A DNA stretch of 64,000 nt, taken from Saccostrea cucullata. Taxonomy: Eukaryota. The DNA lies in the NCBI RefSeq assembly GCF_032062105.1, contig NW_026928083.1, positions 62,001 to 126,000 of the forward strand, given 5' to 3'. The notes under the pieces are model-generated. The model was given only the letters and a program-made list of their open reading frames with translations, was not told the DNA's origin and searched no databases. Shown one piece after another: positions 6,840-54,076 of this stretch. Within the stretch, counting starts at the first letter, position 1, and each line of letters opens with the position of its first letter. The translations under genes were made by a program, and so were the position numbers.

Positions 6840-9028
6840 ATATATATATATATAATTATAATATCGATCCCGCAGGTGAATAGAAATATAACTGCTATAT
6901 ATCTAAATGTCGTGTTGAAGACCACAGAAAGTGCTTTCTTCTCACGTGTAAGTTCTTAGATATATTCTGTTTCATATGAATAAAATAATAAGTCTGCCTA
7001 AACGGGCTGCTATTGGTCATCACCATCGGAACTTCATTAGATTGTTGGAAAATGCAATCTTCAAAAACTACATAGACCACGCAATAAAAAACTCAAGCAT
7101 CTGTTACATCAATTCCAACGTACTTTTGTATACAATTAGAGTGTTATAACAAGATAACTTTGCAAGTGAGCAATGACAATCATGGGGGTTTTTTTTAGGT
7201 CCGTTTGAAGTATACGCACCTGTTTATGCTGACAAATAGCCTTCAAAGTTGACATTAAATTATCGTGTTGAATGGTTGTATAAAGTGTTAATGATAGTCC
7301 TAAATTTTCTTTTTTACTGCTGTTTTTATTTTTGTGAAGAGAAAAAAAACCCCAGACGCAACGATTATTTATTGCGACCCTCTATGAATCCATGTTTTAC
7401 AGGAATTTTTAAGAAGTTAAGGAATCAAATATAAGTATGTTAATTCAAATTCCTTTTCATTGTTGAAGTTATTAAAATGATCAAAACTGACGTAATTTTG
7501 AAGGAATATCTACCTTTAAATTAAGTGGAACATTTTTAAAAGATAAAGTTCAAGCTGGAGATGGACTCTTGCTTTAGACGCTGGATCTTAAGATTTTTTT
7601 GGACATAGGATTGAAGTATGTTATTTTTCTGAGCAGGAAAATCCAAGTAACCATTTTTCTTACTTTGTCAAGATTGACTGCGATTCATGCAGATGTTCAT
7701 TACTGGAACTTTCATTAAATGAACAACTCTGTGTCCCTATTGATAGTATTCAGTATTTTTGATTGTTTAGTATGTTTTATCCAGGAGAAAATGGAATGCT
7801 GTGAACTGATCAAAGTTTATTTCAGACCTACATGATTTCCCAGACATTTTTATCTCGTTACTGTTTTATCGATTTTTCTTATCACAGTCTAATATTTGAA
7901 GGAGTTATGACTATCCTTTTTTACAACTTGTATAAATATCATAAACCTATTTTTTATCGGAAGGAAAGACCAATGTGACGTACAATACATATCAAGTTAG
8001 AAGGACTTATGAGTATAAAATCAACTCTTATGTAGTGATTTATTTCTTTCTATAACCAATGTGAACATTTTTTTTTATCCAACATAGCTTGTGCAGGTAG
8101 GTAAAACGTATCTAAACATTAATTTAAAAATATTTTTCTTTACTTAGGAATAAGAAAATATTCAGAAAGGATATCGTATGTATTAACAATTATAGATCTT
8201 TATATGTGTTATTCATCGTTAAAATTTTGTCGTACACAAACTTGAATGACCTTTTTTTGTAGGCTGCAGTCTATTGTAGGATTATAGTCTTGAGTTTTAA
8301 ATCCATACACGTTTAACATTGTAACACTCTTATCTGATAATATATATTTTTTAATGAGACAAAGCTACTTTATCTATTATGTCAATGGATATACTGTATA
8401 TTTGCATTTGTCCGTCATGTCATTTTCAAAACTTTATTAATGCTTAAAGATAAATTTTTATATTTCGTATTAGGCAACCATTAATATTTGAATATTTTAT
8501 TGGTCTTCACAAATTAATATGACAAGTTTGTCTTCTTTAAGTGTTAAATTTAAGTACTGTAAATCCATTGAGTACTGCAAACCCATAAAGTTTTAGTAGT
8601 AATGTTGCATCAATTTGACACAAGACGAATATGTAACACAAACATCTTTTTTTAAATGATGACACTAAAAAAAAAAAATAACTGAAAAATGATTACTGAC
8701 TTAAGACTGAATCTTTCAAATTCATAAATTACTACGGGTTTTTATTTATTTAGATAAAACTATGTCTTATTTTTGTTGTTTTATATCTCAAAAAGAGGAT
8801 GAGAGTAAAACAACTTTACTTTTACTTTTAAATTTATTTTGCGGCTGTGGGGTCATAACTTCCGGTCAAAACACTGGCAAAAGCTGACAATTGCTCTTAG
8901 AACAATAAGACAAGCTTAAAGTCGTTTAAATACATGAAACATTGTATTATTACTACACTCACAGTGTGGAAGCTGTTCCACATAATTTAAATCGGGTTCG
9001 ATATTCTACTTAGTTTGCATGCGCTCAT

Positions 9029-9038
9029 GAAAGTGAAA
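9029..9038 (+). promoter_or_regulatory. Candidate ISRE/IRF-binding element GAAAGTGAAA upstream of the cGLR
   Basis: Exact GAAAGTGAAA, just 5' of a candidate UTR-exon donor (AG|GTAGGA, 9057) that could pair with the acceptor at 9618. A short motif in AT-rich DNA, so it could be chance. Confidence 0.35.
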
Positions 9039-9672
9039 ATAGGAAATATGTTTTAGGTAGGATTTGTATCAGTATTATAAATATTAATTACATGCTCTTT
9101 TTTACCACAAAAATATTTGATACAAAGCAGCTCGTTTTTATTTTTTAAAAAGTCAATTCTTTATTTTATATAACACAAAACAGAAAAAAAAATTAATGCT
9201 GAACTCAAACAGTTAATTGAAATCGGACGCATTATAAACATGATAAAATTTTTATATTTAAAATTCATACATTAATTATTTCATGAAAGTTAAAAGTTCT
9301 TATAATCATTAAACGAAACGGTTTAAGCAAAAAGATTGCATAATATGCAATACCGCGTTATACAAGACTGTGTTCTGTGTATATAGATAGGTACCATACA
9401 TGTATAAACATAGTCATTTCCTTGGGACTTCAACGCCATTTCGATTAAGGTCTACCCCACACCAAACTTAAATGAGGAAAAGTGACCGGTTATAAAATAT
9501 GGGTTTTGAAAGAAATAATTCGTAATTAAATCATATTTCCAAATAAACGATCAATGTATCCCTTATCTGCTGATTTATTCATCTACATGTAATTATGGAA
9601 AATTTTATTTGTTTTAGGATAACCTCAGACTGTATTGTATGTTATTGATGCACCGTTCAAATATATTTAACT

Positions 9673-12477
9673 ATGGAAAAAGAAGTACCATTCACAGTAT
9701 ACATGCTACAGTTAGCCACCAAAAATTCTCTAGACGAAGAGGATATTGAAAGATCTTCCCCGGATTTATGCACGGAACTTCACCTTGCGATATTAAATAG
9801 GGATATAGATGCATGTCGTAGAGAGGTACAAAAAATCGAGCATATCAATAATAAAGATATAAGAGGCGATTCAGCACTTCATTTAGCAGTACGCTGGATA
9901 ACACCGATAGGGGAAGATTTAGCAAACAAATTGGTTTCTGCTGGGGCGAATGTTAATATTCGGAACAAATGGTGCCAGACTCCACTACACTATGCCGTCT
10001 TTGCTGGTTCTGGCCGCAATGTAAGTTGTTTACTGGCACAGACAAATATAGACGTGAATGCTGCTGATGTAAATGGTTACACACCCTTGCATTGTTGTTT
10101 TCGGTACAAATTAGACCATGAAGGAGAAAGTTTCGATAGAGGAGGAATTTTTAGGAATGAAGGAGATGATTTGCTAGAAATTGCAGACAAACTTATATTA
10201 GCGGGTGCAGACATTAATGCAACTACAAAATATGGAAACAGCATATTACATCTTATTGTTAGAAAAGATGACAATTCAGAACTTTTGAAGTTAATGTTGG
10301 AAAAGTACTTAGGATTCAATGTCTATATAAAAAATTATATGGGGGAGAATTTCTTGCATGTATATGTTACAAGTGAAGTTATTGAAAAGGTCATTGAAAA
10401 CATAGAGTTCATTTCCATAAACCTTTCCGAAGAGGCAGTAAAGACCTTGCTTAATGATAAAGACATATATGGAAGAGCACCTTGGGCAAACATGATAGAT
10501 ACAGGAAATATTGACGCGGATTCGCTCGTAAGGATGATAGAACTGGGCTCTGATATTTTTTCTGCAGATTGTATGAAAAACACAGCTTTACACAGGTTAG
10601 CTGGAGTAAGTTGGGGAATTTCTTTTCTTGATATATTGGAAATACTTATGAATGCAAATGTGAACTTGAACTCAAAAAATGTGTTCGGAGAATCAGCTGC
10701 GTTTGTTGTCTTTCAAGAAGAAGTGTTCAGTGTTTTGATGAAAGGAAATGTGGACTTCACTTTAAAAGATCGTTGGGGTAGATCTCCTTTGATGTCAGTA
10801 CTTAAGCATAGGCCCATACCTGAATTGATTAGGAGGCTTATTATTGAAGGAAATGTTGATGTCAACGCTGTTGATGAAAGCGGTTCCACTCCTCTTCATA
10901 TTGCGGCATATCACAATTTTGAAGAACAAGTAGAACTCTTACTAAGCCATGGCGCAAATGCCTTTGCTGAAGACAACTTAAAAGAAAGACCTTTGGAAAC
11001 TGTTAAGCGACACTGCAGTTACCGCTGTTACAAGCTTCTATCTCACACAGAAAATACCGAACTTCTTTATTCTCGCGTCAAATCGTTCGAAAAAATGCTT
11101 CTTGAAATGCCAAAACGCATTCAATGTTCAGTTATCAAATCAAAAGAAAGTATTGAGCATGCATTAGGTCTCCCAGAAAACCGTGCTGAAATATTTGATT
11201 TTCTAATGCATACATACTATGACAGAACACCGGAAAATGCGAACGAAATTTCTCAAATAAATCAAGAAATTGTAGGACTTGTACAAATACTGTGCAATAG
11301 TATTGCATCATATGATAAACGATTTAGCATGTCTATTTTTCGCACTGGCTCTTCAGAGGAAAATACTAAGGTTGGGCCTCCAGACGAATTCGATTTTGCT
11401 CTCTGCATTAATGAATTGCAAGAAATAACAACTATCGTTATGACAAAAGAATGCACAGAGAAAGGATTTGCATGTCTTAAATTTTGTAAGAATCCAATAC
11501 CCGAAGACTACGTACAGTTTTCAGACTTGGAAGGATATTTCTTAGCATTTCCATATCTTAGCCTATATAGAACCTATCTTAAGAGAGCTCTGAACGAAGC
11601 ATCAACATGGACCAAAGGAAATCTCCTTTTCAATTATGAAGACAAGATGGAAGTTATCAGTGGAAAGCCTGTTTTCAACTTTGAAGTTTACTGGATAGGA
11701 TGTGTTTACAAACAACTTAAAATCAGCATTGATCTGGTTCCTGTTGTTTACACACCGGGATGGTGGCCAAAGAATGTTAATTTCCCGGATTTTATTGAAA
11801 TGAACGAAGATGTTCAAAAGGCAGGTTGTTTTCTAATTCTTCAGACGAAGAGAAATGATTTTAATAGAAATAACCTTATAGCTGGCGATGATATATACGA
11901 GACATGTAACAACAATCGAGATGTGAAAACCCGAAGAATGCTTCGTGTGTCCGCAGCACCTGCAGAAATAACACTAATGAAAACGCTGCCAAATGTGTTT
12001 CGTTCCGCTTATATTCTTGCTAAGATTATGAAAAGCAAAGAAGTTTGTCCTAAAATTGAAATTGACCAGCTTCCATCAACTCTCTACGCTCATCAAAGTG
12101 CCTTCAAATTGCATAAGCCACCCCCTATTAACCCGTCTCATGTCATCAAAAGTTACATGCTTAAGAATTGTACATTTTATCTTTGGCTTGAATTGCACAA
12201 AAAAATCTTGGATGAAAATTTAAGCAGCACAGACATTGCTGGTCGTCTCTTTCAGTATTTGCTGAAATTCACAAATGTTCGGCAACTTAGCCCGTTTTTC
12301 CTTCCTTATTCGGACGTTTTCGAGTTTGAAAAGGATGAATATATATCTTCATACAATAAGTTTTTGCTGAATTTGAAAAGAGAGTTAAGCATAAAGACTA
12401 TTCTTGGTATATTAAAACACGACTTCCCGGAGGAATGCTTATCTATAAGTAACATTCTGACATTTTCAATAGATTAA
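9673..12477 (+). CDS. Ankyrin-repeat + Mab-21/cGAS-like nucleotidyltransferase (ANK-cGLR), 934 aa, single coding exon
   Basis: About 10-12 ankyrin repeats in aa ~33-460 (GDSALHLA, QTPLHYA, GYTPLHC, GNSILHL, NTALHRL, GRSPLMS, GSTPLHIAA). The C-terminal half has the Mab-21 signature TGSSEENTKVGPPDEFDF, a third acidic residue in ISIDLVP and the helix IKSYMLKNC. A splice acceptor TTTTAG ends at 9618, before the ATG. Confidence 0.9.
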   Translation: MEKEVPFTVYMLQLATKNSLDEEDIERSSPDLCTELHLAILNRDIDACRREVQKIEHINNKDIRGDSALHLAVRWITPIGEDLANKLVSAGANVNIRNKWCQTPLHYAVFAGSGRNVSCLLAQTNIDVNAADVNGYTPLHCCFRYKLDHEGESFDRGGIFRNEGDDLLEIADKLILAGADINATTKYGNSILHLIVRKDDNSELLKLMLEKYLGFNVYIKNYMGENFLHVYVTSEVIEKVIENIEFISINLSEEAVKTLLNDKDIYGRAPWANMIDTGNIDADSLVRMIELGSDIFSADCMKNTALHRLAGVSWGISFLDILEILMNANVNLNSKNVFGESAAFVVFQEEVFSVLMKGNVDFTLKDRWGRSPLMSVLKHRPIPELIRRLIIEGNVDVNAVDESGSTPLHIAAYHNFEEQVELLLSHGANAFAEDNLKERPLETVKRHCSYRCYKLLSHTENTELLYSRVKSFEKMLLEMPKRIQCSVIKSKESIEHALGLPENRAEIFDFLMHTYYDRTPENANEISQINQEIVGLVQILCNSIASYDKRFSMSIFRTGSSEENTKVGPPDEFDFALCINELQEITTIVMTKECTEKGFACLKFCKNPIPEDYVQFSDLEGYFLAFPYLSLYRTYLKRALNEASTWTKGNLLFNYEDKMEVISGKPVFNFEVYWIGCVYKQLKISIDLVPVVYTPGWWPKNVNFPDFIEMNEDVQKAGCFLILQTKRNDFNRNNLIAGDDIYETCNNNRDVKTRRMLRVSAAPAEITLMKTLPNVFRSAYILAKIMKSKEVCPKIEIDQLPSTLYAHQSAFKLHKPPPINPSHVIKSYMLKNCTFYLWLELHKKILDENLSSTDIAGRLFQYLLKFTNVRQLSPFFLPYSDVFEFEKDEYISSYNKFLLNLKRELSIKTILGILKHDFPEECLSISNILTFSID

Positions 12478-27569: not shown

Positions 27570-29251
27570 ATGAACACAGAAAAAATATCTCAAGCAATAT
27601 CTGATGGATTAAAACAATTGTCTATAAGTGAATTAAAACTAAACCAGAAGAAAGTTATAGAAGCATATTTGAAGAAAAAGGATGTTTTCTTCTGTTCACC
27701 TACTGGAAGTGGTAAATCATTAACATTTGAGCTGGCGCCGTTTTTGTTCAAAGCATTATAAGTTCAGCTCATGATAAAACAATTGTGTTGGTCATTTCCC
27801 CTCTGACCTCTCTTATAAGAAGTCAGGTAGATGCATTGCAAAAGAAAGGACTTAGTGCACATCACCTTAGTGAATTAGGCGGAGAGTTTGCTGATCCTAC
27901 AATTATCTTTGCAAGTCCAGAATCGATATTGGGAACACAAAGAAAAATTACAGAGGATTTGGCAAAAAGAAACTTTATTAAAGCTATTTTTGTGGATGAA
28001 GCTCATTGCATTAAGAAATTGTAAGTACAGAATCTTTATATGGATACTTCTAAATGATAGTAGAAAAAAATATTAAAAATTGTGAATTATCATAACAGCT
28101 CTCCTCTTATTTTGTATGTCAGTTAAAAAAATCAATTCCTTAACTCCCAAATCACAAACACACCTCACAAACACAATGACATACATGTGAAATAAAACAA
28201 TATCTTTTGTTTTTCATGCAGTGGTGAAGATAAAAAGAAAAAACCAGCATACCGTCCATTTTATGGAAAACTTGGAGAAATAAGATCTCTCACAGGAGAA
28301 AATGTTCCAGTGATAGCATTAACAGCAACAGCTACCATTAAAACAAAGGATCACATCTATAAAAGTTTATCAATGAATAAAGTTGAAGAAATAATTGTCA
28401 GTCCAAACAAGCTGAATATTACATATTGGTGCATCAAGTTATAGCTCAGTAGCATAAGGAAAAATTTTAGATGGCTTGTTGAAGAGCTAAAAGCAAACAA
28501 AGAAAATACAACAAGAATGATCATATTTTTTAGGCAAATTAAGCATATATCAGAAGTTTATGAGCACCTGGAGGAATCACTAGGCAAGGCATCATATGTC
28601 AATTATCAGGAAGATGGCCCTAATGACGACCGTAATAGGCTCTTTGATATGTATCATCTAAAAACAGATGATGATGTAAAGGAATCTATCTGTTCATCAT
28701 ATCAGGATCCGACTGGTAATATTCGGGTAGTTCTTTGTTCAACATCCTTTAGCATGGGCCTGGATGTGAAGGCAGTTGACACAGTTGTTCATTATGGTCC
28801 TGCCAATGATATTGATGACTACCTTCAGGAGACTGGACGTGCTGGTAGAGATCCACTTATTCAAAGTCATGCAATACTCCTGTTGTATAAAAGATCCTTG
28901 GGTAGTCGTAATATAACTCCTCAAATGAAGGAATACACAAAGTCCAATCTGTGTCGAAGACAGTGTTTGTTAAAAATGTTTGAAAATAAACCAGAACCAA
29001 TATCTCCGATGCATAACTGCTGTGATAACTGCAGGAAAAACTGTTCATGTTCATGCAAATGCTCAGATGAATGTTCATGTGAGGAACCATGTAACAGTGT
29101 TAAATCTAAAATATTTGAACGAATTCTTTTGACGAATGAAGAGGACTCAGACGATAGTCAGACATCAGATGAAGGATTATCTGATGACAGTGAATTCATT
29201 AGATATTTGTCCACAAAACCAGTTCTAAACTACTCATCTGATGAAGACTGA
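27570..29251 (+). pseudogene. AcademH RecQ-like SF2 helicase (intron 28021-28221; frameshift ~27757; premature TAG 28442-28444)
   Basis: PTGSGKS (motif I), VISPLTSL, VDEAH (II), ALTATA (III), SFSMGLD (V), QETGRAGRD (VI), RecQ Zn-binding CRR..CCDNC. Confidence 0.88.
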
Positions 29252-29362: not shown

Positions 29363-32300
29363 TTTTTTTTTTTTTTTTTTTGTAATAAGATTTTATTCAG
29401 TATTTTTTATAAATAACAACAATACATAAACAAAAATAATGATAGAGAAACATGAAAATCTATATGTTGTTAAATACATCAATTGTTTACATATTTATGC
29501 CAAGTTATTACAAAAATAAAGAGTAAATCCGATGTGTTCTCGATTATAGCATTTTTTTTATAGTGCATATACATATAATGGAATCATGTTTTTTTAAAGA
29601 CAAAGTGTTGCAGAGTATAAATATACAAAATATATACTGAAACAGAGTTGAACTAGAAATTATGGTCCACCGGGGTCCTAAAACCACAAAAAGTCCAAAC
29701 ACTCCCCAGTGGACGATGCTACTTGAGACTGTTCTCTCGAAGTAGCTGCCTAATTAAAAAAAAAAAAAACATGTATACATCATATTCTTAATGTTTCTGC
29801 AAATTTTGAAAAAATATGTTTATCACAATTCATAAGACGTAATACAGAAGAATATTGAATAAGTGCATTTTTGACATATTTTAACAAATCTATTTCAGTT
29901 TCTTTCAGAGATTCAATTCTACAGTACATTTTGTATTTATATATTTTATACGCTATAAAAGATATTAATAAATTCAAAGATTCAACCTTATCGTTCTTTT
30001 CTAGATAAAAGCCAAGAACGATGTGTTTCCATTTTATATCCATAGTTAAAAAAGTTCCTAATTTTTTCCAAATCTTTTCAACTATTTTACATTCAAAAAG
30101 TAAATGTTTTGTGGTTTCAGTTGTTTTGCATAAAGTACAGTTGTCCCCCTTGTCCTTTATCCATTTACTTAAATAGGTATTGTTGCAGAGAATATTATGA
30201 AGCATTTTATAATTAAATTCAGCGACTTTGTTGTCATTTATATCTTTGATTTTTCTCATGTATATATTTTGCCATAGATTTGAGTCGTTTACAGGAATTG
30301 AAAACTCTTGAGAAAGTTTAATTTGATAACACGGTTTAACGAATTTTTTATGTATCAAAATTTTATAAAAAAATTGGCATTTCTTACCATTTAGATTTGA
30401 ATCCCCTGTTGCAAAATGAAATCTCATTTCATTCTTTATGTTTAAATATTTGGCATTAGATAAGTCACATTTTTTACACAATGGTTTAATTGCTGATAAT
30501 AAAGTTTTATATTCACAAAGCCAGTTCGACTTTCTTTTAATAACAGTGGAAAGCATTTGTAGTGTTTTTATGTTTCCGTTATCATCTATTAAATCTTTTA
30601 AATAGAGAATATTACTGTTGACCCAGTTGTTGAAAAATAATGTTTCTCCTTTTATTTTGATATTATTGTTATTCCAAATGGGTTGTTTTAAAATATCATT
30701 AGGTGACGTATTTTCGAAGTTACACATTTTTTTACATTCGTTAAATGAGATTAGAATTTGTTTGTAGAAAAGCGGAAGCTTGCCTATTCTGTCAAGCGCT
30801 TTTAAACTAGTTTCTGAAAATTGTAAGACGTAATTCAGATTTAAATTCGATTTTTTCAAAAAACTCTCAAAGATTTCAAATACAGTGCCCTTAGAAGATA
30901 TCAGTCGCGGTATCCACGCTGCTTTCAGAGCCTTGAACTTGCATTCAATATCTGTAATTGATAAACCTCCGTCAGTTAAATCGCCGATCAGTGTATTTCG
31001 TTTGATTCTTTCCGATTTGTCCCATAAGAAATTAAACAAAAGTCTTTGGACCTTACAGATATATTTTTTATTTGGTATACACAATATAGATGCAACATAA
31101 ACTAGTTTTGAAATTGCTAATGTTTTGATTATACACGATTTACCAAAAACCGTTAATTTTCTACTCTTCCAAGATTCAAATAACTTTTCAATGTCGTGGT
31201 AGATTTTCATCCAATTTTTATTGTAGCATTCTTCTTTATCGTGTCCTATATAAATACCTAGACATCTTATTGCTTTATTTGTTGCTTTAATACCGTTGAT
31301 TTCATCATACATATCTTTGAGCCCCCCTAACAGGATACATTCCGTCTTGTTTATGTTGATTTTTGATCCGGCGTGATCGCAAAACTCGTTTATAATTTTC
31401 AAACTAAAATCGAGAGATTTCTTGTCATTCAGAGCAACTGTTAGGTCATCTGCATGTTGTATATTAATAATTTCTTTATCATTTATACTAATTCCTGATA
31501 TATTTGGTTCGTTTTTGATTTTTATGGATAAAATTTCAGCTACAAATAAGTATAGTAAAGCTGATATTGGACATCCTTGTCGGATTCCTCTCGTCATATT
31601 ACATGTTTTAGATAACCATCCGTTATTTTTCATTTTGAATTTAGGGTTTTTATATAATATCTCTACCCATGTAATAAATTGATCGCGAAAGCTTTTTCAA
31701 AGTCGAGAAATAATAATATGCCGTCTCTCTTCTCGGAATTACAATATTCAAAAATATCTAAGATTAGCCGAGCATTTTCACCTATGTATCTGCCTTTAAC
31801 ATAAGCCGTTTGATTTTTATTGATTGTATATGATAATATATTTTGTAACCTTTTAGCTAAAACACAAGCTATGATTTTATAATCAGTGTTTGTTAAGCTA
31901 ATTGGTCTATAATTTTTTAACAATTGTTTTTCGCCTTTCTTGTGTATTAAAGATATCACAGACAACTTTTGAGATTCAGACATTTCTTTTTGTTTAAAGA
32001 TTTCTTTAAGTGCGTCATAAAAAATGGGCCCTATAATGTTCCAAAAACATTGGTAGAATTCACATGGTATACCATCTAAGCCAGGAGACTTTTCTCCTTT
32101 CATTTCAAGTACGGCATTTTTGCATTCATCAAGTGTAGGGAATTCATCTAACATTAATTTGTCCTTCTCGTTCAGCATTGGTACTTCAATATTGCTTAGA
32201 TAACTCGAAATCTTAGCGGTTGGAATATTTGTAGTTTTAAACAGATTCGTATAATAATTATTCATTTCTCCGATTAATGAATTTGTAGTGTTTATTAAAT

Positions 32301-33743
32301 CGCCAGTAGGCGTTTTAAGTTCTTTAATTACATTAGACGTTTGATTTTGTTTTTCAAGATTTAAAAAATATTTTGTATTTTTTTCGCCGCTCTCTATCCA
32401 TTTTGCTTTTGATCTTATTTGTGCCCCTTTTATTTTTTTGTCATTAAGTTCATTTAAATTTGTGTATAGTGCCTTAAGTTTTCTATTATTTATATTGTTA
32501 CACTGGCTATTTTCCATATTTTCTATCTCTTTTTCAATAAGGGCTATTTTTCCTCTCATATTCTTTCGTTTATTTTTTGCGAAAAATATTGAAAATTCTT
32601 TAACTTTACGTTTAAAAAGTTCCCATTTGTCGATCGGATTTTGTACATTATCTACTTCATTAACTAAATTTGCAATATTTTCCTTGTATTCCTTATTCTC
32701 TAAATATGAAACATTTAATTTCCAATAATTCGGACCTCTTGAATTTTTAGAGATACTAAAATACATTTTTAAATATCTATGATCACTCATTCTTGTGCCT
32801 CGGGAATGAGTACCTGGTAACTTTCTCACTATAATTTTACCTACTTGAAAACAGAAATTATTATTCATAAAAATATAGTCTATTCTACTAAAAGGGATAT
32901 CTTGGGCATTACACCACGTTTCGCCTTTCAAATCAGGGTGTTCTCTATTCCAGACATCTACCATATCAAGCTGCTTTAATAGGTTAATCAGATAATTTTT
33001 ACTTTTGTCTTGTTTGTCATTGAGTCGACAATTAAAATCTCCACATAGAATTACGTTTTCATTTAAACAATTTTTGGTAATAAATGTATGCACTCTTTTG
33101 AAAAAATCAACTCTTTTGTTGATGTCGTTAGGTGCGTATATATTTACAATTGTAAAAATTTCATTATCATATTCAACATTTAACAACATTTTTCTACCAT
33201 CAATTGATTTTTTCACATTCAGTATTTCGATACTTAAATTCTTCTTAAAAAATATTGAAACGCCTTTACTATGTGACGAATCGCTGTATGAATGAAAACT
33301 TTTCCCATGCCATCCGGCATTATATTTATGTTCATTTTTTTCAATAAAATGTGTCTCTTGTAATAAAATAACATCACATTGAGATAATTTAAGCCATTCA
33401 TATAATTTTTGACGTTTTTCATCAGAATTAAGCCCCCTTACATTAACTGATATAATCTGTAGTTTGTCCATAGTATCGATGTTCTAGGTTAATGAAATAT
33501 AATATGGTAGTAAAATATTTAAGTATAAACATACCGGCATCATAGTCATGAGTTTGAATTCAAAAGAAGCAGTCTATTGGAGCATTACGTTTCCTCTTCT
33601 CCGTCCGTCTCGGATGAGATATCACTTCCGGATGCAGAATCGTGTTCCTGCTGACGGGCGCGCATTTCACTAATCATCACTGATATGTCGCGCTGTTTGC
33701 TGCTCTGTTTTGAGTTTTGCTTCTGTTGAGGACTGCTCCATTG
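29363..33743 (-). mobile_element. 5'-truncated Tx1/L1-clade non-LTR retrotransposon nested in the Academ transposase
   Basis: Poly(A) tail (T-run 29357-29381) with AATAAA just upstream. ~12-bp TSD AGGGGATTTTTT (29351-29362, 33744-33755). ORF1 C-terminal remnant 33743-33585; ORF2 with APE and RT. Confidence 0.92.
29780..33471 (-). pseudogene. Tx1 ORF2 (APE endonuclease - RT - zf-RVT), broken by a deletion/frameshift at ~31686
   Basis: NVRGL, LQETH, NIYAPN, GDFN, RIDY, SDH; KSPGLDG, YRPISL, LDFEKAF, GIRQGCPIS, QHADDL; CTLC..ETTKHLLFEC. Confidence 0.9.
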
Positions 33744-36700
33744 AGGGGATTTTTTGACTTTTGGAATGAAGGATCATGTTGTCTTCCAGGTATAATGGAA
33801 AAGAGGTCAAGTTTTTGATACTGTTTAACTAATTTCAAAATATCCTCAGTGAAATCTGCTGCTGTGTGTTTAGATGTTGCTTTTTTCACATGACAGTTTG
33901 TATCAAAGCATAGTACAACAGATTGTAATGAAAGTGCACTTCGGCTTACTCTGGACACTGTTTTCTCTGTAAAAGTACCCCTGAAACTATGTGCTTCATC
34001 CTTGAAAACCTTGTTGCAGTGTTCTATGTCTAGATCATTTGGATGATTTGAATCGAAATCTCCTCGGTGATTGACAGTTCGATTCCATATCAATCTGTGT
34101 GCCATCCTTTCCGTCAAAAGCACGTTTGTCTGAGCTATTGTCTCTAATAGCCCATAAGCATACTTCGGACAGTTGCAAGCTTTGTAAAACAGGACAAGAA
34201 ACTGATTAATTCGCATTATACGCTCACCATCTCCCATACGAATGGCATCGTTGTGGTTCATTCTAAGTAGCCCCAAATTCAACATTAATCGTGTATAGTT
34301 GAATACTCCATCATCTGAGGTCTCTGTCGTAATTTCTGTAATATTAGCATCTCCATACAATGGATCTGGATGACCATGAACATTCGCCTCATGCTTTCGC
34401 AGAGATTTCGGGCGCTTATATTCCTTATTGCAGTAACGACAGATCAAAGATAATGATTGGGGACCATGCTCTGGCAAAAGTGGTGTGTCAGGAACACAGA
34501 ACTGCTTAGCAAATTCAGATGCATGGTCTAAAAGATATTCACACATCTCTTTCTTGTTGCCAATAGCACCGCTATACATATTTTTGGTTGGGACCGTGTT
34601 CAAGGTGTCCATTCCAAAGTATTCAAGACCTCCAGTAACTATGTAGGCTAATGTGACTTTTTCTACCAGGTCAGAACAAGCATAAAAGTCTTGAGACGAA
34701 TGTTGAGTGACATTCCTCGAGTTCAAAGTATTTCTTGCAGCATACAAAGTTCCTTGGTTGCGGGCAGAACTGGTGTTATAAAGTAGTGTCCATATTACCT
34801 AATTAAAAATAATACAATGCATTTAATAATAAATAATATATTAATATATATGTCATACTTTTAATGTCTATTAAACAAAATAAATGTACAAGATATGGGA
34901 TGAAACTGAATTTTACCTTTAGCAATTCAGCTTGGTTATGAAACTCTTCCATTTTTGGAATTAGGCCCTGCAAACGCTTAGACGGGGTACGGCCATTTCG
35001 TTTTGACGATTGGGCTTGCTTGTGGCGCTCAAATGTGAGGTAGTCACCCCCACTTAATACTTTGTCAGGTTTCTTCTGCCAGTTATCAATTGTTTCATGC
35101 CCAGGAACAAAAGTGTGTAGAAATTCACAAATATCTGTCATATCTTCATTGTACTGCTCACATTTCATAAGTACTCCCAGGTTGATCTGGAAAATATATG
35201 GTTCATTGCACACTATTAAAATTTTTTCTATGCTGAAATTTTATTTTAATACAATTTTATCTTGAGAGAAAATATATTTCTTTGAAATTATTTATCTTTT
35301 TCCCCATGTAAGTAATAAAATTGCTAAAAGAAAATGTAGAAAAAGTCTACTTGCCCTGTTGGTTCGAGTTTTCATTTCTTTGAGATACTCATGACTGATG
35401 TATTTTTGCAGAACATTAATGTATGGCAAAAAATGAGGAATGTACTTTGACCATTGCTGTGCCACTAAGAAAGCTGCTTCAGATAAAAAACATTTTTTCT
35501 CATGTTCACCCGGTATGAAGTTCTTGAAATTGTATGTGTCAATGTTGGTCTTGGGTCCACTGTTATCGATATGGTTTCCAGAAACTCGATTTTCATAGGC
35601 ACAAATCTGGAACATGTGCTGATCTTTGTTTTGGTTGGTAATGGTCATATTCCTAACTTTTGTTCTCAGATCTACATTGTCACCAACAAAATAGTATCCT
35701 GGGTGCATAATTTTTCGATGTTGCTGTAGATCTTGTCTGCTGTAGATAATGCAAGTGTGAACTCAGGGTCTCTATCAACATCCTGATGTACTCTTACTAA
35801 TTCTTCATAAACATGCACACTGTTCATCAATTGATCTTCAGTTTCTCTATCCTGTTCAACAAAAACTTGCCAACTTCTGATATTTCGATCCCAGTCTGAC
35901 CCATAGCGATCTGCCAATGCTAAAGTTGCTGGATATGACAAGCAATCAAAAGTAGAATTTAACCTTCTAAAAGCTGACTTTTTACAGCCTCCTTTCAGCA
36001 ATATGATGCTATTGATGTGTTGAAAGAGACTAAGCTCTTGATTATGGATACTCAGTAACTTTGATCCCACTGACACAATACCAGGCAGTAAAGCGTCATC
36101 TTTTTTACACTTGTTTCTTGTTTGTGATGGATTTGACACTATTGTTTCCAGGATTTCGAGGAATACTGGGGCTTCTTTCTGCCATTCTTTTAATACTTTT
36201 TCTAAGGAAAATGACTGCACAGCCTGCTTATCTTTTCTTCTAAGCACAGAATTGAAGCCCTTTGAAACAATATTTCTTATTTCTGATTGTAGTATTTGGT
36301 AAATTTTATTTTTTAGACATTCAAGGACATTCGGAATTTGGAAAATTTTTTCTGAAAATTCCTTTATGTTTCCACATTCTAATAACTGGACAAGCTTTGC
36401 ATCACGGTTTTGAGAAGAATCTTTATTTTCCTAAAATAGTTTAAAGAATTAAAATAACAACTTGAGTTAAATTATAAAAAAAATATGAAAAGCACATAAA
36501 ACTTGTTTATGTTCAGATTTTGAATGCCTAGTGGACCCAGTTTTTCAATTTAAAAAATCAATGTTCTGAATGTGTATTGATTATTGTAAGTCTTATAATT
36601 TATTTTAAATTTATAAATAAAAAAAAAACAGACCTTGTAGTCATCAGTCTCAGAGAAAGGTTGAAAATATTGGTCTATATCTTCAGATCCAGTCTGATAT

Positions 36701-48047: not shown

Positions 48048-51000
48048 TCAGTCCTCATGAATCAAAAGAACCAGTTCTGATATTGGCCTTGTGTATGTCA
48101 TGGATTTGTCGTCCTTGACTATTTTCACCTCCACTTTACGCACTTTGTCGTCAGCACTTTTGATTGCGTTAGTAATGATTCCAAGCGGCCACTCACACCT
48201 TGCAGTGCTTGAGTCTTTCACAAGAACAATGTCTCCTACACAGAGATCAGGTAAGGTTTTTTGCCATTTACGCCTAACTTGAAGTGTTTGTAGGTATTCC
48301 TTTTTCCAGCGGTCCAAGAAAATATTAGCAAGATGTTGGACACAGCGCCACTGGGATTTATACATATCCTTGATGCTGAATGGTCCAAAATCTGTCGGAA
48401 TGTTGTAAGTCTTCCGAGTCAGCAACATGTTTGGGCTGAGAATCATAGGGGCTTCTGGGTCTGACAACACTGGGACGATTGGCCTGGAATTGACGATGGC
48501 ACATACTTCGGCCATAAGGGTCGTCAATACTTCATGAGTAAGATGTTTTGAATGTAAGTCCATGAGCATTGAGTCGAGTATCCTACGAGCAATCCCAATC
48601 ATCCGCTCCCACACTCCACCCATGTGGGAGGAATGTGGGGGATTGAAGATCCAAGTCACTTCTGGTCTGATAGAAATTCCTGAACTGGCTTGTCTTCAAC
48701 GCTTATGGCATTGACGTCTAGGTCATCAATCGCTCCAACGAAATTAGATCCACGATCAGATCGGATTTCTTTTACATTTCCTCTGAGAGAAATAAATCTT
48801 CTTAAGCAGTTGATGAAAGAAGAGGATGAAAGTTCTTCGATCACTTCTATATGAATGGCTCTAGTGTATAAGCAAGTGAAAAGTACAGCCCATCGCTTGC
48901 TGTTCGACACTCCACCTCTTGTTTTGCGAGTCGCAATTGTCCATGGCCCAAAGGTATCTAACCCAATATAAGTGAAAGGAGGGCAGGGTTGAATTCGGTC
49001 TGCTGGTAAGTCAGACATCAGTTGACTCTGGTATTTTCCACGTAGTCGACGGCACTTTACGCACTTGTGTAGCAGTGAGGATATTAAGCGCTTCGCTCCA
49101 ATAATCCAGAATCCTGCTGATTGCAGTGCCCCAGCTGTGAAATGTCTCCCTTGATGCTTTACCATTTCGTGAAAATGGCGTATTAGTAGGACAGCTGCGT
49201 AATGATTCTTTGGAATGATAAGTGGATGTCTCTCGTTGATACTAAGGTATCCTCTCTTCAATCTACCTCCTACACGTAACAAACCGTTTTTATCAATAAC
49301 TGGATTCAAAGAGATGAGGCTACTACTCCTTGGCAATGACCTATGTGATTGCAAGCACACAATCTCCTGCGCGAAAACCTGTCGCTGGACCATGCGTATA
49401 ATGAGGTCTTCCGATGAAAACAAGTTGTTTGAGGCTGCAAGATCCTTTGGAGAGTGATAACTCCTAGATAGTGTTCTCAATCTGTCTATGGATCTCACTA
49501 ATACTTTCCAAGTAGAGAATCTCTCAAGCCTATGAGTTATGCGAAATGCCTCAAGTTGATCCCCTTTGTCGTTGAAAGTTGTTTTAAGAGTTTCAACGTC
49601 TTTAGTCTTGCGAATTTCAACGTCATTCTCAGGATCACAGAGATGATATTCTGTATTGAGATTGTCTTCAATCGGTTCTCTGAGTTGAGGAGGTCCTAAG
49701 ATCCACCTGTCGTTGATAATGTCCTCAGCAGTCATATTTCTCGTACCAGAATACGCTGGGTTATGTTTAGTTGAAATATACTGCCATTGGTCAGGTGTTG
49801 TTGATTTTCTGATTCGGTCGACTCGGTTTTCTACGTACTTATAGAATCGTCTGCTTTGGTTATGTATATAACCCAGGACAACGAGACTGTCGGTATAAAA
49901 GCGAACAGAGTTAACGTTCATGTCAAGTTCTTCATTGATGATATCATATATCTGGACCGACATCACAGCCGCACAGAGTTCCAAACGTGGAACAGAATGT
50001 CCTTTCATTGGTGCAAGCTTACACTTTCCCAAAACGAATCCCACATGAACGTTGTTTGACACATCGACTGTACGTAAGTACGCCACTGAAGCTATGGCTG
50101 TTTCCGAGGCGTCTGAGAAAATATGGAGCTCTATGGACAAGGTCCCTTGTAGAGAGACTGGTGCATATGTTCTTGGGATATGCACATCTTCTAGGAGTTT
50201 TAAGGAGTCTTTCCAATTAGACCATCTGTCCAATAGATGAGGAGGTAAGGGGTCGTCCCAATTGTGTGAACCTCTTAATGAATCTCTCATCAAGACTTTT
50301 CCAGAGACTACGACTGGCACAACGAATCCAATGGGGTCAAATATCCCGTTAATTGTCGACAATAGTCCTCGCTTACTGAAAGGCCTTTCTCCCACTGATA
50401 AACGGTATGTGAATGAGTCAGATTTCAGCTCCCAGTTCAATCCTAAGCTTCTTAACGTAGGAAGTTCATCAACACTTAAGTCAATATCACTGAAGTCCTT
50501 TGCCCTGTCCTCAGGTGGAAATGCATCCATAACATGCTTGTCGTTTGATGCTACCTTATGTAAACGCAGATTACCACCCGCCTTAGGGGCAGCTTGTGTT
50601 CGTTCAAGCAAGTCGATTGCCTTATCAGCAGTTGGGAGAGAAATCAACCCGTCATCGACATAGAAGTTTAGACATACAAAGTCTGTCACATCAGGTCCAA
50701 AGGTATCCTCATTGGCACAGGCAGCCTTCCGGAGGCAATACACAGCAACGGCTGGTGAAGGTGAATTACCGAAAACGTGAACTCGCATTCGGAACTCTAT
50801 CAACTGGTTGTTTATGTCATTGTCTTTGTACCAGAAAAAGCGGAGGAAGTTCCTGTGTCTCTCGTCAACTAAAAAACAGTGAAACATAGACTCAATGTCT
50901 GCTGTTACAGCTACAGGTTCTCTCCGGAATCGCAAGAGTACACCGAGAAGTTCGTTGTTTAAATCTGGACCAGAAAGAAGTACGTCGTTAAGGGAAATGT

Positions 51001-54000
51001 TCTGAAACTTGGCAGAGGAGTCAAACACAGCTCTAATTTGCGACAGCTTTTTAGGGTGGTACACCCCGAAAATGGGTAGATACCAACACTCTTCTTTTTC
51101 TTTAAGAGGGGGTGCGATTTCTGCATGGTTGATGTCAAATATCTTTTTCATGAAGGACATGAAATGCTCTTGTTTTGTTGGGTCTTTCTGGAGACTGATA
51201 TCCAGATTTTGTGCTCGCTTGAGTGCGTAAGATCTGTTGTTTGGTAGCGGTTGTCGCTTTTCTCTAAATGACAATGGCGCTTCCCAATTACCTTCAAAAC
51301 TAAGATGAACATCTTGATCCATAGCTCTGATGAAGTCCTTATCGTCTACCGAGAGACCAACTGTATCATCATCCTTTCATTTCATGAAAATAGAAGAATC
51401 CAGATCTCGTGAATAGTGACCAGTATCTTTATTGTGGACTTCTACGTGTATGTTATTGGGACATGGCTGAAACATGGATGTCCTCCCGTTAGGAAGCAGG
51501 TAAGTTTTGTTCACTACAACTGAGTTTGGACGATGAACTTTGTTTAAACAAGATTCACCTACTATCACCCAACCCAATGTAAGTCTCTGCGCAAAGGGTG
51601 AATTTCTAGGACCTGTTCGCGGTTCTGCTACATGGTGTGCCTCTGGAATATCACGGCCAATCAAGATGAGAATCGGAACATTTTCATTAACTTCAGGTAT
51701 GTCGTCTGCAATGTTCTGAAGGTGAGTATATGATTTCGCTACCTCTGGTGTAGGTTTTTCATTCCGGATGTCTGGAATGTGGTTGCATTCTATGACAATG
51801 GGTATGTCAACTGATGATGATCCATCGAGAGATGAAACAGTGAGATTTAGGGCTTGTCTGCCTAGCATGTCAGTAACTCCAGAACAGGAAGTTAACTGAT
51901 AGTCAGTCATTTCACTTTCAATATAAAGCTGATCAAAGACTTCTGACTTTACTAGTATTCTGTTGCTTTGATCGTCTATTATTGCGTATGCCTTTAGTGT
52001 CTTACTTGGATCGTGGGTTTGGTGTAAGTTTACCAAAACTACTTTAGCACACGATTTCCCTGAGAATCCATCTCTGCATACCTGAGTGCATGCTGACGTT
52101 GTAGAATTATCACCCGTCTTCTCCCCACCATGCAAGACTGTGCGTGTTCCGATGTGAAGAGCTGATGGATGAGAGTGGCCTCCACACTGAGAACAACGAA
52201 TCTGAGCTGTACACTCCTTATACTTGTGTTCATCAGAATTACAGCATTTGAAACAAATCTTGTTGTCCCGCAAAAAACGTTTACGTTCCTCAAATGACTT
52301 GTCTCTGAAACCACGACAGTCATTCAGACTATGATTAGCTTTGTGAAGGGGACACACTGTACTAGTTGACTTCAAATTTTCTGAATTCTGCGTGACTCCG
52401 GTTTTCTTTGTGTCGATCCATTGTTTCACTTGATTGTTTCTCTGACCAACCTTTTCTTTCACTGTGTAAGAATTTGTTGCATTCTCAGTGGTGTACATGA
52501 ATCCAGGGTCATTTCTCATTTTGCTGATATCTTTCATGAATGAAACGAAACATGTGAATGGTGGGAAAACAACAGCATGTTGTTGTTTGTATTTGTACGC
52601 ATGAGTAATCCACTTCTCCTGAATGTTGTGTGGAAGCTTACACAGTATGGGCGCTATACCAGAAGAAGAATTGAAGTGGCTCAACAGACTTCTGTACTTT
52701 GGACTAGACATCAGTGACTCAATCTCACAAAGTAAGTCTAACAAATTATATAATTTCACATTGTCTCTGTTAGTGAGTTTAGGGAATGAAGACAATTTTG
52801 ACATCAACACAGATTCTAGCAGTTCAGGACTACCATATCGTTCGTCTAGACGTTCCCAGATTCTCTTAAGGGCTTCTGAGGGATCTGACACATTTGCTGA
52901 CCTGATGCTTGTGGCGTATTTCAATGGAGCTGGTCCGAGCCATTTTGTGAGGAGATCTAGTTCTTCGGTTTTTGTTGTTTCCAATTCTTTTATTATTTCT
53001 TGAAATTGCGCCTTCCAGAATATGTATGTTTGTGGCTGGTCATCAAATCGAGTAAGTCGAGATATGAGCAAGTCTTTCTTCAAAAGAAACTGAGTAAAGT
53101 AATTTATTTGGTCATGTCCATTCGCTGAAGTATCTGGAATATTTGGCTGTCTATGAAGAAAAGCTCTATCTTGTAAAGTAAATTCAGGAAAACGTGGTTG
53201 CCTTGGAAGAAAGGCTGGCGCGTATGCATTCAGTTCGGCTGCTGGTTTCGTTTCCGCCTCACGATTTATGACCGACTGTTCATGAATATAACGTTGGGTT
53301 CTCTCCATTGGGTCAATGGGTCTCAAAGCTTCCAATCTCTCCAAATCTCGCAGCATTGGTTTTCCATCTTCATTCTCTAGTGCTTCTGCTTCTGCTTTTG
53401 TTGCTGCTACTTCCTGTTTGGTGTTTAGGAGTCTCAATTCAGCTTCGAGTTCTTTTTGTTTCCTCAAGGATGCAGCTCGAGCTACTTCTTCTTGTTCAGC
53501 AATAACTGCTTTCTGTTTCAGTATTGATGTCTCTTGTTGTACAAAGTCTAGTCGAACTTTCGCTGCCTCTGCTTTAGCACGCATACGAGCAAGTTGTGAT
53601 GATGAATTCGAACTATGAGTGTTTTTTGATTGTGTTGATCTAGAGATTCTTGAACGACGTGAAGCGTATTCTAGTGCTGCTTGACGTGATTCGTTGATTT
53701 TGTCTATCACAGACATCACAGATTCCTTACATTTCTGCATGAATGAGGAGTGTTCTTGATTCTCTTTGATACTCTCTTCTGTTCTTGCCCTTGTCAGGAG
53801 TGACACAAATTTTGCGGAAGTTGAGCAATATTCTGCATAGGCTTTTGAAAGGTCACTTTCAAATGTGTTCAAGTAATCTAAGTTTGTGATGTTACTACTG
53901 AAGGAAGAGATAAGGTTTTCAACAACTGCCCATTGAGCCTCTGACTTTGTCTTATAATCTTCACGTTCCTCGTTGAAGAGTTCTGCCGCCTTTTCAGTCA

Positions 54001-54076
54001 TAGTTCGAATCCGTTTAGAATCCTCAGGATTGAACTCGCTCTCCATTGTTGAAATTGTGTAAGACATTAGATCCAA
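48048..54076 (-). pseudogene. BEL/Pao gag-pol polyprotein with one in-frame TGA (51379-51377) and one frameshift (~48658)
   Basis: Three Zn knuckles (CPLH..H..C, CFKCC..H..C, CSQC..H..H), protease IIDDQS, RT FYVDDG, RNase H FSDAS/YTDS, integrase HHCC + GLDTFG/SDRGSNF/WERMI. Confidence 0.92.

What the first reader, a model, noticed from the sequence alone, without database searches (positions are those of the whole stretch)
9673..12477. Intact ankyrin-fused cGAS-like receptor: candidate protein-sensing second-messenger synthase
Seen: an uninterrupted 934-aa ORF joining ~10-12 ankyrin repeats to a Mab-21 fold with all catalytic features (GS-x9-DEFD and the third Asp in SIDLVP). This contrasts with the damaged mobile ORFs nearby. 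Known: cGAS-like receptors make cyclic dinucleotides for STING and are expanded in bivalves; characterised ones sense dsDNA or dsRNA. Inference: the ankyrin array may be a protein/PAMP-binding or autoinhibitory module, giving an innate immune pathway with an unknown trigger and product. The vertebrate cGAS Zn-ribbon (H..CC..C before the SY.LK helix) is not evident.
Basis: partly seen in the sequence, partly recalled or inferred. Interest (0 to 1): 0.8.

Follow-up and report, generated by a model that had tools for sequence, protein, structure and literature searches.

The report
Ankyrin-fused cGAS-like receptor gene, oyster
This is a real, expressed and conserved oyster-type gene that joins twelve ankyrin repeats to a catalytically intact cGAS-like enzyme; the architecture was already catalogued in 2023, but what switches it on and what it makes have not been tested.

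Summary
Window 9673-12477 (+) is one uninterrupted 934-aa ORF with 12 ankyrin repeats (about residues 29-460) and a Mab-21/cGAS-like nucleotidyltransferase (about 500-934).

- **Active site:** G559-S560, E572-F573-D574 and D687 are invariant in 46 homologues.
- **Fold:** the predicted NTase fold matches oyster Cv-cGLR1 best (Z 26.7).
- **Selection and expression:** dN/dS against the Saccostrea echinata orthologue is 0.19. RNA-derived contigs cover only the exon and start at a splice acceptor.
- **Pathway context:** the genome also holds STING exons and at least 8 intronless ANK-Mab-21 paralogues. The scan had already noted some of these on other DNA of this genome (s1-710911, s1-703763).

The architecture is not new. 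Li et al. 2023 name ANK-cGLR fusions as a class, and their Table S2 lists members of this very family. Those I checked are absent from their biochemical screen table.

Three observations bear on mechanism. The NTase is near-neutral (pI 6.2). The stretch aligned to cGAS's N-terminal spine helix is not basic. The ankyrin concave-face positions are more conserved than convex ones. Together these favour regulation through the ankyrin array, by a conserved partner or an intramolecular dock, over canonical nucleic-acid sensing. Trigger and product remain untested.

Verdict: a new member of a known but uncharacterised kind.

The parts
9616..9672 (+). Start of the coding exon: splice acceptor (polypyrimidine tract then AG at 9616-9617) and a short 5' UTR with an in-frame TGA at 9646-9648
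   Evidence: The X1 contig lies on the window from 9616 and carries 27 unmatched letters upstream; depth is zero further 5'. Sequence read. Translating 9619-9690 shows a stop before the ATG.
9673..12477 (+). Single-exon CDS of 934 codons plus stop: the ANK-cGLR fusion protein
   Evidence: The orthologues in S. echinata and A. tenebrosa are also single uninterrupted CDSs.
9757..11052 (+). Twelve ankyrin repeats (about residues 29-460); a low-confidence insertion in repeat 4 (residues 150-163)
   Evidence: Pfam Ank families. AF2 model pLDDT is mostly above 90 here. Foldseek to 1n11 and 5y4f gives TM-score by target 0.85 and 0.84. Repeat anchors.
11053..11169 (+). Linker and N-terminal extension before the NTase core (about residues 461-499); pLDDT dips to 56 around 461-470
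11170..12474 (+). Mab-21 / cGAS-like receptor nucleotidyltransferase domain, both lobes (about residues 500-934)
   Evidence: PF03281. Family profile against PDB: cGAS 5e-17, Sp-cGLR1 (8gjy) 3e-13. VIA-align: Z 26.7 to Cv-cGLR1, 23.1 to Sp-cGLR1, 22.7 to mouse cGAS.
11347..11394 (+). Activation-loop and catalytic motif G559-S560-x10-D571-E572-F573-D574
   Evidence: G559, S560, E572, F573 and D574 are invariant in 46 homologues of 22-78% identity. It aligns to the cGAS GS...EFD motif.
11725..11742 (+). Third catalytic Asp D687 in S-I-D-L-V-P
   Evidence: Invariant. It aligns to the cGAS stretch S-V-D-I-I-L.
12151..12165 (+). S827-Y828-x-x-K831 helix motif of the C-terminal lobe
   Evidence: Invariant. 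It aligns to the cGAS stretch SYHVK.
12473..12488 (+). Two ATTAAA hexamers at and just after the stop codon: candidate poly(A) signals for a very short 3' UTR
   Evidence: Sequence read. Oligo-dT RNA reads reach the 12402-12575 bin and none lie in 12576-12923. Inference only.

Best explanation
A functional, transcribed gene with an intronless CDS for an ankyrin-repeat-fused cGAS-like receptor (ANK-cGLR). It belongs to a subfamily found in oysters, mussels, clams, scallops and some cnidarians. The C-terminal domain is a catalytically competent Mab-21/cGLR nucleotidyltransferase. It most likely makes a cyclic (di)nucleotide-type second messenger read by one of the genome's STING proteins. Its activity is most likely gated through the 12-repeat ankyrin solenoid. 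The solenoid packs rigidly against the enzyme and offers a conserved concave face for a conserved partner. That partner could be the enzyme itself (autoinhibition relieved by a trigger) or a conserved host or microbial ligand. This differs from the basic nucleic-acid-binding groove used by cGAS, Cv-cGLR1 or Sp-cGLR1. Shown here: gene integrity, fold, active-site conservation, purifying selection, transcription, and presence of STING. Inferred: the product, the STING coupling, and the role of the ankyrin array.
For: ORF and domains. Family: more than 50 full-length ANK+Mab-21 proteins of 850-1050 aa in Saccostrea (78% identity), Mytilus, Mercenaria, Pinctada, Ruditapes, Pecten, Mizuhopecten and Acropora. 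Active site: G559, S560, E572, F573, D574, D687, S827, Y828 and K831 are invariant in 46 sequences. Sequence profile against PDB: cGAS E 5e-17, aligning all three motifs. Fold: the NTase model (pLDDT 85.3) matches Cv-cGLR1 at Z 26.7 (rmsd 3.3 over 335 residues), Sp-cGLR1 at 23.1 and mouse cGAS at 22.7. Bacterial CD-NTases score 15-18 and OAS about 15. Selection: dN/dS against the S. echinata orthologue is 0.19 (ANK 0.22, NTase 0.16). Transcription: contigs of run X1 cover 9616-12330 only, with an unmatched 27-nt leader at the AG acceptor. Oligo-dT RNA reads from three runs lie on 11010-12575. STING: STING_LBD exons above the Pfam cut-off at 5 or more loci of the same genome. Against canonical nucleic-acid sensing: NTase pI is 6.17 (family median 6.1), whereas Li et al. 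report above 8.5 for dsDNA- and dsRNA-sensing cGLRs. The stretch aligned to the basic N-terminal spine helix of mouse cGAS has net charge -1 (family median -2), against +6 in mouse cGAS. For an ankyrin interface: the full-length model has pTM 0.89, and NTase loops (about residues 655-664 and 725-754) are more confident than in the isolated domain. Canonical ankyrin target-binding positions are more conserved than convex helix positions (0.52 vs 0.33 mean pairwise identity, p 3.5e-4), most strongly in repeats 7-12.
Against: No biochemical data exist for any ANK-cGLR that I could find. Whole-domain pI and the charge of one helix are crude proxies, and some family members have a basic NTase domain (pI up to 8.8). 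I could not read the model's coordinates or PAE, so the ankyrin-NTase interface is inferred from pTM and pLDDT only. The groove-versus-convex comparison uses an approximate repeat register. RNA depth in the oligo-dT runs is low (1-7x), and those reads are 95-99% identical, so they come from divergent alleles or the second copy. X1 is labelled RNA only by guess. Many catalogued cGLRs were inactive in vitro in Li et al.'s screen.
Confidence: 0.6

Rival explanations
1. The NTase domain is still the sensor, for dsRNA, dsDNA or another polyanion. The ankyrin array only localises the enzyme or recruits downstream partners as a scaffold or adaptor.
For: All cGLRs with a known ligand sense nucleic acids. 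The closest solved fold is the dsDNA sensor Cv-cGLR1. Some family members have a basic NTase domain, pI 8.2-8.8. A conserved ankyrin groove would also fit a conserved host partner.
Against: The window protein's NTase has pI 6.17, and its spine-aligned stretch has net charge -1 against +6 in mouse cGAS. Li et al. place nucleic-acid sensors above pI 8.5. The high pTM suggests the two domains are not independent beads.
Confidence: 0.2
2. The ankyrin array is itself a small-molecule or nucleotide receptor, by analogy with the ankyrin domain of RNase L that binds 2-5A. The protein would then relay or amplify a nucleotide signal rather than detect a pathogen protein.
For: Only the analogy (my own knowledge of RNase L), plus the conserved concave face in repeats 7-12 and the coexistence of 25 or more Mab-21 loci that could supply signals.
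Against: No sequence or fold evidence links this array specifically to RNase L. The top Foldseek matches are generic ankyrin, AnkB and DARPin arrays.
Confidence: 0.07
3. A non-enzymatic Mab-21 scaffold, like MiD49/MiD51 or MAB21L1, that uses the fold only for protein or nucleotide binding.
For: MiD49 (Z 22.8) and MAB21L1 (Z 21.3) score almost as high as cGAS in the fold search.
Against: The full GS / E-h-D / D catalytic set is invariant across 46 homologues down to 22% identity. NTase dN/dS is 0.16.
Confidence: 0.06
4. A silent or decaying lineage-specific duplicate with no current function.
For: A co-linear second copy on contig C18470 (83-92% nucleotide identity) carries +4 and -5 indels and a stop. 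The surroundings are rich in transposons.
Against: The window copy is intact over 934 codons. It has a 78%-identical intact orthologue in another genus with dN/dS 0.19, and it is covered by transcript-like contigs and oligo-dT reads.
Confidence: 0.04

Closest known systems
ANK-cGLR fusion class catalogued by Li et al. 2023 (cGLRs are a diverse family of pattern recognition receptors; PMC9980059, Fig. 1C, Fig. 4C, Table S2)
   Same: N-terminal ankyrin repeats plus a C-terminal cGLR with a complete active site. Homologues of the window protein are rows of their Table S2: Mytilus coruscus CAC5388653.1, Acropora XP_029202789.2 and XP_031549647.1.
   Different: This gene and species are not in that table. 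No ligand, product or structure is given there for any ANK-cGLR. The three accessions I checked are absent from their table of synthesised enzymes.
Cv-cGLR1 (Crassostrea virginica; PDB 8gjw), a dsDNA-activated 2'3'-cUA synthase
   Same: Best structural match (Z 26.7, rmsd 3.3 A over 335 residues). It is a bivalve enzyme with the same catalytic motifs and no Zn ribbon requirement.
   Different: Only 16% identity. Li et al. place dsDNA- and dsRNA-sensing cGLRs, Cv-cGLR1 among them, above pI 8.5 with a basic groove. The window NTase has pI 6.2 and a non-basic spine stretch, and it carries a 12-repeat ankyrin array.
Vertebrate cGAS
   Same: Mab-21 fold. The GS...EFD, third Asp and SY..K motifs align. 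Z 22.7.
   Different: No Zn-ribbon insertion. The stretch aligned to the N-terminal spine helix is not basic. It has an ankyrin N-terminus rather than the N-terminal tail I recall for cGAS, which I did not test. It is not an orthologue.
Acidic 'auto-active' cGLRs, e.g. Pd-cGLR (pI 5.0), which Li et al. propose respond to non-nucleic-acid ligands
   Same: Low pI and a non-basic primary ligand surface.
   Different: The main text does not describe those as fused to other domains (I did not check their rows in Table S2). Here an extra 460-residue ankyrin module is present.
RNase L (ankyrin repeats + effector domain in the OAS pathway)
   Same: An ankyrin array is fused to an innate-immune nucleotide-signalling enzyme module. 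This rests on my own knowledge and is analogy only.
   Different: In RNase L the ankyrin domain receives the messenger and the effector is an RNase. Here the fused enzyme is on the synthase side. No specific similarity was found.

Membership tests
cGAS-like receptor (cGLR) family, in the sense of Li et al. 2023 | Bilobed Mab-21 / cGAS nucleotidyltransferase fold | tested here: met
   PF03281 E 2e-8. Profile against PDB: cGAS 5e-17. VIA-align: Z 26.7 to Cv-cGLR1, 23.1 to Sp-cGLR1, 22.7 to mouse cGAS, over model residues 48-461.
cGAS-like receptor (cGLR) family, in the sense of Li et al. 2023 | Complete active site: G-S activation loop, [E/D]-h-[E/D], and a third acidic residue | tested here: met
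   G559, S560, E572, F573, D574 and D687 are present and invariant in 46 homologues.
cGAS-like receptor (cGLR) family, in the sense of Li et al. 2023 | [quoted passage not shown] | not testable with these tools
   Needs purified protein, NTPs and TLC or LC-MS.
cGAS-like receptor (cGLR) family, in the sense of Li et al. 2023 | A STING receptor in the same genome | tested here: met
   PF15009 STING_LBD exon matches above the cut-off on contigs C13564, C8194, C10459, C1668, C4070, C2230 and C5634/C23783.
Nucleic-acid-sensing cGLRs (cGAS, Dm-cGLR1, Cv-cGLR1, Sp-cGLR1) | High pI (above 8.5) and a long basic primary ligand-binding surface | tested here: not met
   NTase pI 6.17, whole protein 5.52. 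The spine-aligned stretch has net charge -1 against +6 in mouse cGAS. Criterion taken from PMC9980059. These are sequence proxies only; no electrostatic surface was computed.
Vertebrate cGAS orthologue | Zn-ribbon insertion (H-x5-CC-x6-C) between the catalytic core and the C-terminal lobe | tested here: not met
   No such Cys/His cluster in residues 688-826.
ANK-cGLR fusion architecture (Li et al. 2023, Fig. 1C / Table S2) | Ankyrin repeats and a cGLR domain in one polypeptide, and homology to listed members | tested here: met
   One ORF. Ank plus Mab-21. Related at 25-50% identity to cluster representatives whose 90%-identity clusters hold CAC5388653.1 and XP_029202789.2, and at 53% to XP_031549647.1, all three listed in Table S2.
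Non-catalytic Mab-21 proteins (MiD49/51, MAB21L1/2) | Loss or non-use of the catalytic acidic triad | tested here: not met
   The triad is present and invariant. The fold similarity (Z 21-23) reflects the shared superfamily.
OAS family | OAS-type NTase fold as the closest relative | tested here: not met
   OAS1 and OAS2 score Z 14.8-15.2, well below the cGLRs at 20-27.

The most novel reading that the evidence does not exclude
The ankyrin solenoid is the true sensor. Its conserved concave face holds the NTase in an off state. It is displaced by a non-nucleic-acid trigger: a pathogen protein, a modified host guardee, or a small molecule. This would make the subfamily the first cGLRs with a defined non-nucleic-acid ligand and a guard-like logic. 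A separate open point is that the subfamily may have moved horizontally between bivalves and a sea anemone as an intronless gene.
Probability: 0.3. Interest if true: 0.8.

Novelty: new member of a known kind. Interest (0 to 1): 0.42.

Why it matters
cGLRs are a large animal receptor family, but only dsDNA and dsRNA are known as triggers. Li et al. 2023 explicitly leave open whether some respond to non-nucleic-acid ligands. ANK-cGLRs are a conserved, selectively maintained and expressed subfamily. Their enzyme domain lacks the sequence hallmarks of nucleic-acid binding and carries a dedicated protein-interaction module. That makes them a concrete place to test the question. This gene gives an intact, intronless coding sequence that is easy to clone, with a clear orthologue and paralogues for comparison. 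By itself it adds a member and some comparative evidence. It does not add a new kind of system.

Tried and rejected
1. **Part of a mobile element or an upstream-extended multi-exon CDS: rejected.** An in-frame TGA lies between the splice acceptor and the ATG. The orthologous CDSs are single blocks of the same length.
2. **Pseudogene: rejected for the window copy**. The co-linear copy on C18470 is broken or poorly assembled.
3. **Actinia tenebrosa homologue as simple contamination: not supported.** A genuine actiniarian GPCR lies 2.7 kb away with no gap between them.
4. **Organisms behind unnamed homologues P0010 and P0012: not identified.** Only run and assembly accessions came back.
5. **A paper characterising an ANK-cGLR: none found**. 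One apparent hit with many 'cGLR' matches is probably about CgLRSAM1, judging from its title and abstract.
6. **Domain-level dN/dS showed no sign of diversifying selection on the ankyrin array** (0.22). Site-level tests need more coding DNA than I fetched.
7. **Coordinates and PAE of the models could not be read**, so the ankyrin-NTase contact surface was not mapped.
8. **The careful tree search did not finish.** Only the quick IQ-TREE result was used.
9. **The big representative-protein search was not used**, because the word search and family scans settled the family.
Full report
**1. The observation**

Window 9673-12477 (+) is a single ATG-to-stop ORF of 934 codons. It is the only ORF of 100 aa or more between 8000 and 14500. 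Its G+C content (0.37) stands out modestly from AT-rich flanks.

Pfam finds ankyrin families across the N-terminal half (Ank_2 E 4e-33) and PF03281 Mab-21 at residues 563-708 (E 2e-8, above the gathering score).
- G559-S560, ten residues (not nine), then D571-E572-F573-D574.
- D687 inside S-I-D-L-V-P.

Between D687 and the S827-Y828-x-x-K831 helix there is no His/Cys cluster of the cGAS zinc-ribbon type.

**2. Gene model and expression**

A polypyrimidine tract and AG at 9616-9617 precede the ATG. An in-frame TGA lies between that acceptor and the ATG, so no upstream coding exon can feed into this frame.

Contigs of public run X1 lie on 9616-12330 only. Depth is zero in 8400-9443 (next to none, 0.13, in the 9444-9617 bin that holds the contig's first letters) and zero again in 12402-12749. 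The 5'-most contig carries 27 unmatched letters before 9616. This is the pattern of a spliced mRNA with a non-coding leader exon, not of genomic DNA, although the run's RNA label is only a guess.

Three oligo-dT RNA-seq runs (raw reads) put low depth (about 1-7x) on 11010-12575. That 3' bias fits a short 3' UTR after the two ATTAAA hexamers at 12473-12488. Those reads are 95-99% identical and share only some variants with the second genomic copy. They therefore reflect allelic diversity or both copies.

**3. Family**

The word search returned the window's own protein and more than 50 proteins of 850-1050 aa with the same Ank + Mab-21 make-up:
- Saccostrea echinata, 78% identity.
- Several Mytilus species, 40-50%.
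- Mercenaria, Pinctada, Ruditapes, Pecten and Mizuhopecten.
- Acropora, about 25%.
- One Actinia tenebrosa protein, 53%.

In an alignment of 46 full-length members, these residues are invariant: G559, S560, E563, T565, K566, E572, F573, D574, W674, K680, D687, S760, E765, Y780, K784, S827, Y828 and K831.

The S. echinata and A. tenebrosa genes are also single uninterrupted coding blocks. Against the S. echinata orthologue, dN/dS is 0.19 overall, 0.22 for the ankyrin half and 0.16 for the NTase half. Both halves are therefore under purifying selection.

**4. Fold**

With the family alignment, AlphaFold2 gives a full-length model of mean pLDDT 88.2 and pTM 0.89. The NTase-only model (residues 455-934) has pLDDT 85.3.

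The NTase model was aligned to about 48,000 PDB representatives:

| Match | Z | Note |
|---|---|---|
| Oyster Cv-cGLR1 (8gjw) | 26.7 | rmsd 3.3 A over 335 residues |
| Coral Sp-cGLR1 | 23.1 | |
| MiD49 | 22.8 | |
| Mouse cGAS | 22.7 | |
| Tribolium cGLR | 21.4 | |
| MAB21L1 | 21.3 | |
| MB21D2 | 20.3 | |
| Bacterial CD-NTases | 15-18 | |
| OAS | about 15 | |

A profile of the family's NTase domains hits cGAS chains in the PDB at E 5e-17. That alignment covers the GS...EFD motif, the third Asp and the SY..K motif.

The N-terminal half superposes on the 12-repeat ankyrin-R D34 (TM-score by target 0.85) and AnkB R13-24 (0.84). Twelve TPLH-like anchors can be read in the sequence.

**5. Genomic setting**

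- The assembly is 1.17 Gb in 23,869 contigs.
- Contig C18470 (4.2 kb) is co-linear with window 8561-12377 at 83-92% identity, including 1.1 kb of upstream non-coding DNA. It carries +4 and -5 indels and a stop. It is either a decayed duplicate or a divergent, poorly polished haplotig.
- At least eight further loci encode long intronless ORFs with ankyrin repeats plus the GSS-EGTK-PDEFDF motif. Seven of them also match Pfam Mab-21; L004 matches only the family's own NTase profile. A tandem trio lies on C13106.
- The scan's first readers had already flagged two such places in this genome (s1-710911, s1-703763).
- A family profile finds some 25-30 Mab-21 loci in all.
- STING ligand-binding-domain exons above Pfam's cut-off occur on at least five contigs.
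- The window's other ORFs are exons of unrelated genes (a neurotransmitter-gated channel, a tyrosinase, a B-box protein) and split retroelement ORFs. Nothing links the gene to a mobile element.

**6. How it probably works**

What is shown: an intact, conserved and transcribed gene; a cGLR fold; a complete and invariant active site; and STING in the same genome. From established knowledge of cGAS and cGLRs, such an enzyme is expected to condense two NTPs into a cyclic dinucleotide after a ligand-induced rearrangement of the GS activation loop.

Three results bear on what the ligand is.

- **Charge of the NTase domain.** Its pI is 6.17, and the family median is 6.1. Li et al. report pI above 8.5 and a long basic groove for dsDNA- and dsRNA-sensing cGLRs. 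They suggest that acidic cGLRs respond to other ligands.
- **Charge of the spine stretch.** The stretch that aligns to the basic N-terminal spine helix of mouse cGAS has net charge -1 here. The family median is -2 and the range is -5 to +3, against +6 in mouse cGAS.
- **The ankyrin array is not a loose appendage.** A pTM of 0.89 for a 934-residue two-domain chain implies a confidently predicted relative orientation. NTase loops around residues 655-664 and 725-754 gain 20-40 pLDDT points in the full-length context. The canonical ankyrin target-binding positions are more conserved than the convex helix positions: mean pairwise identity 0.52 against 0.33, Mann-Whitney p 3.5e-4. The effect is strongest in repeats 7-12, next to the enzyme.

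A conserved groove speaks against a fast arms-race interface. It favours a conserved partner, which may be the NTase itself (autoinhibitory docking) or a conserved host or microbial molecule.

My preferred reading, at about 0.6, is that the ankyrin array gates a cyclic-nucleotide synthase that signals to STING. The main rival, at about 0.2, keeps sensing in the NTase and makes the ankyrin array an adaptor. These steps are inference. The repeat register is approximate, and I could not inspect coordinates or PAE.

**7. Comparison with what is known**

Li et al. 2023 (PMC9980059) state that 87% of cGLRs are stand-alone enzymes, but that some carry TPR or ankyrin modules. They show ANK as a class in Fig. 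1C and mark ANK- and death-domain-fused cGLRs in Stylophora.

Their domain table lists CAC5388653.1 (Mytilus coruscus), XP_029202789.2 (Acropora) and XP_031549647.1 (Actinia). I showed these belong to this very family. None of these three appears in their table of synthesised enzymes.

Full-text searches found no paper that characterises an ANK-cGLR. The gene is thus a new member of a catalogued but functionally unexplored kind. It is not an orthologue of vertebrate cGAS, because it has no Zn ribbon. It is not a MiD- or MAB21L-type non-catalytic protein, because the catalytic triad is retained.

**8. Verdict**

The finding is real and correctly named. Its novelty is modest. Its value is as a clean, clonable test case for non-nucleic-acid sensing by cGLRs.

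- Interest: 0.42.
- Most novel reading not excluded: a guard-like, ankyrin-mediated, non-nucleic-acid trigger. Probability about 0.3; interest 0.8 if true.

Noticed in passing
L013:10001-12790 (Actinia tenebrosa WAHB01001390.1) and L013:15474-16565: The sea-anemone ANK-cGLR XP_031549647.1 is 53% identical to the oyster protein. In a quick ML tree it sits inside the bivalve clade, next to a Mytilus galloprovincialis sequence (SH-aLRT 98-100). Acropora ANK-cGLRs are only about 25% identical and lie far away. It is not simple contamination: a GPCR whose best hits are Actinia, Actinostola and Exaiptasia lies 2.7 kb downstream with no assembly gap. This is a candidate horizontal transfer of an intronless immune gene, unless the unnamed clade members are cnidarian.
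   Followed up: partly
G000:C18470:1-4198, co-linear with window 8561-12377: A second copy of the gene and its upstream region at 83-92% identity, with +4 and -5 indels and a stop. It is a decayed duplicate or a very divergent, unpolished haplotig. Some RNA-read variants match it.
   Followed up: partly
window 12924-13271: A short, very high-copy repeat just downstream of the gene. RNA and contig depth jump to 10-26x and over 1500x, with many loose read ends at 13069-13152. It behaves like a SINE/MITE-type element transcribed from many loci.
   Followed up: no
G000:C13106:126231-140698 (L006-L008): A tandem trio of intronless ANK-Mab-21 paralogues (899-1009 aa open frames, 28% identical to the window protein), all with the GSS-EGTK-PDEFDF motif. 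The scan had already noted it (s1-703763).
   Followed up: partly
window 29780-33471 (-) and 48656-54076 (-): A LINE-type endonuclease/reverse transcriptase split into two ORFs, and a BEL/Pao-type retroelement (Peptidase_A17, integrase, DUF1759) in two ORFs. There is also a DUF6589/zf-C2H2 ORF at 33677-34747 and a Helicase_C ORF at 28517-29251.
   Followed up: no
window 18687-19226 (+), 22749-24107 (-), 58956-60557 (+): Exon-sized ORFs of host genes unrelated to the finding: a neurotransmitter-gated ion channel, a tyrosinase central domain and a B-box zinc-finger (TRIM-like) protein.
   Followed up: no
window 10374 (X1 contig): An in-frame 9-nt deletion, plus many SNPs, in the transcript contig relative to the window, within ankyrin repeat 6/7. 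This indicates allelic length polymorphism in the ankyrin array.
   Followed up: no
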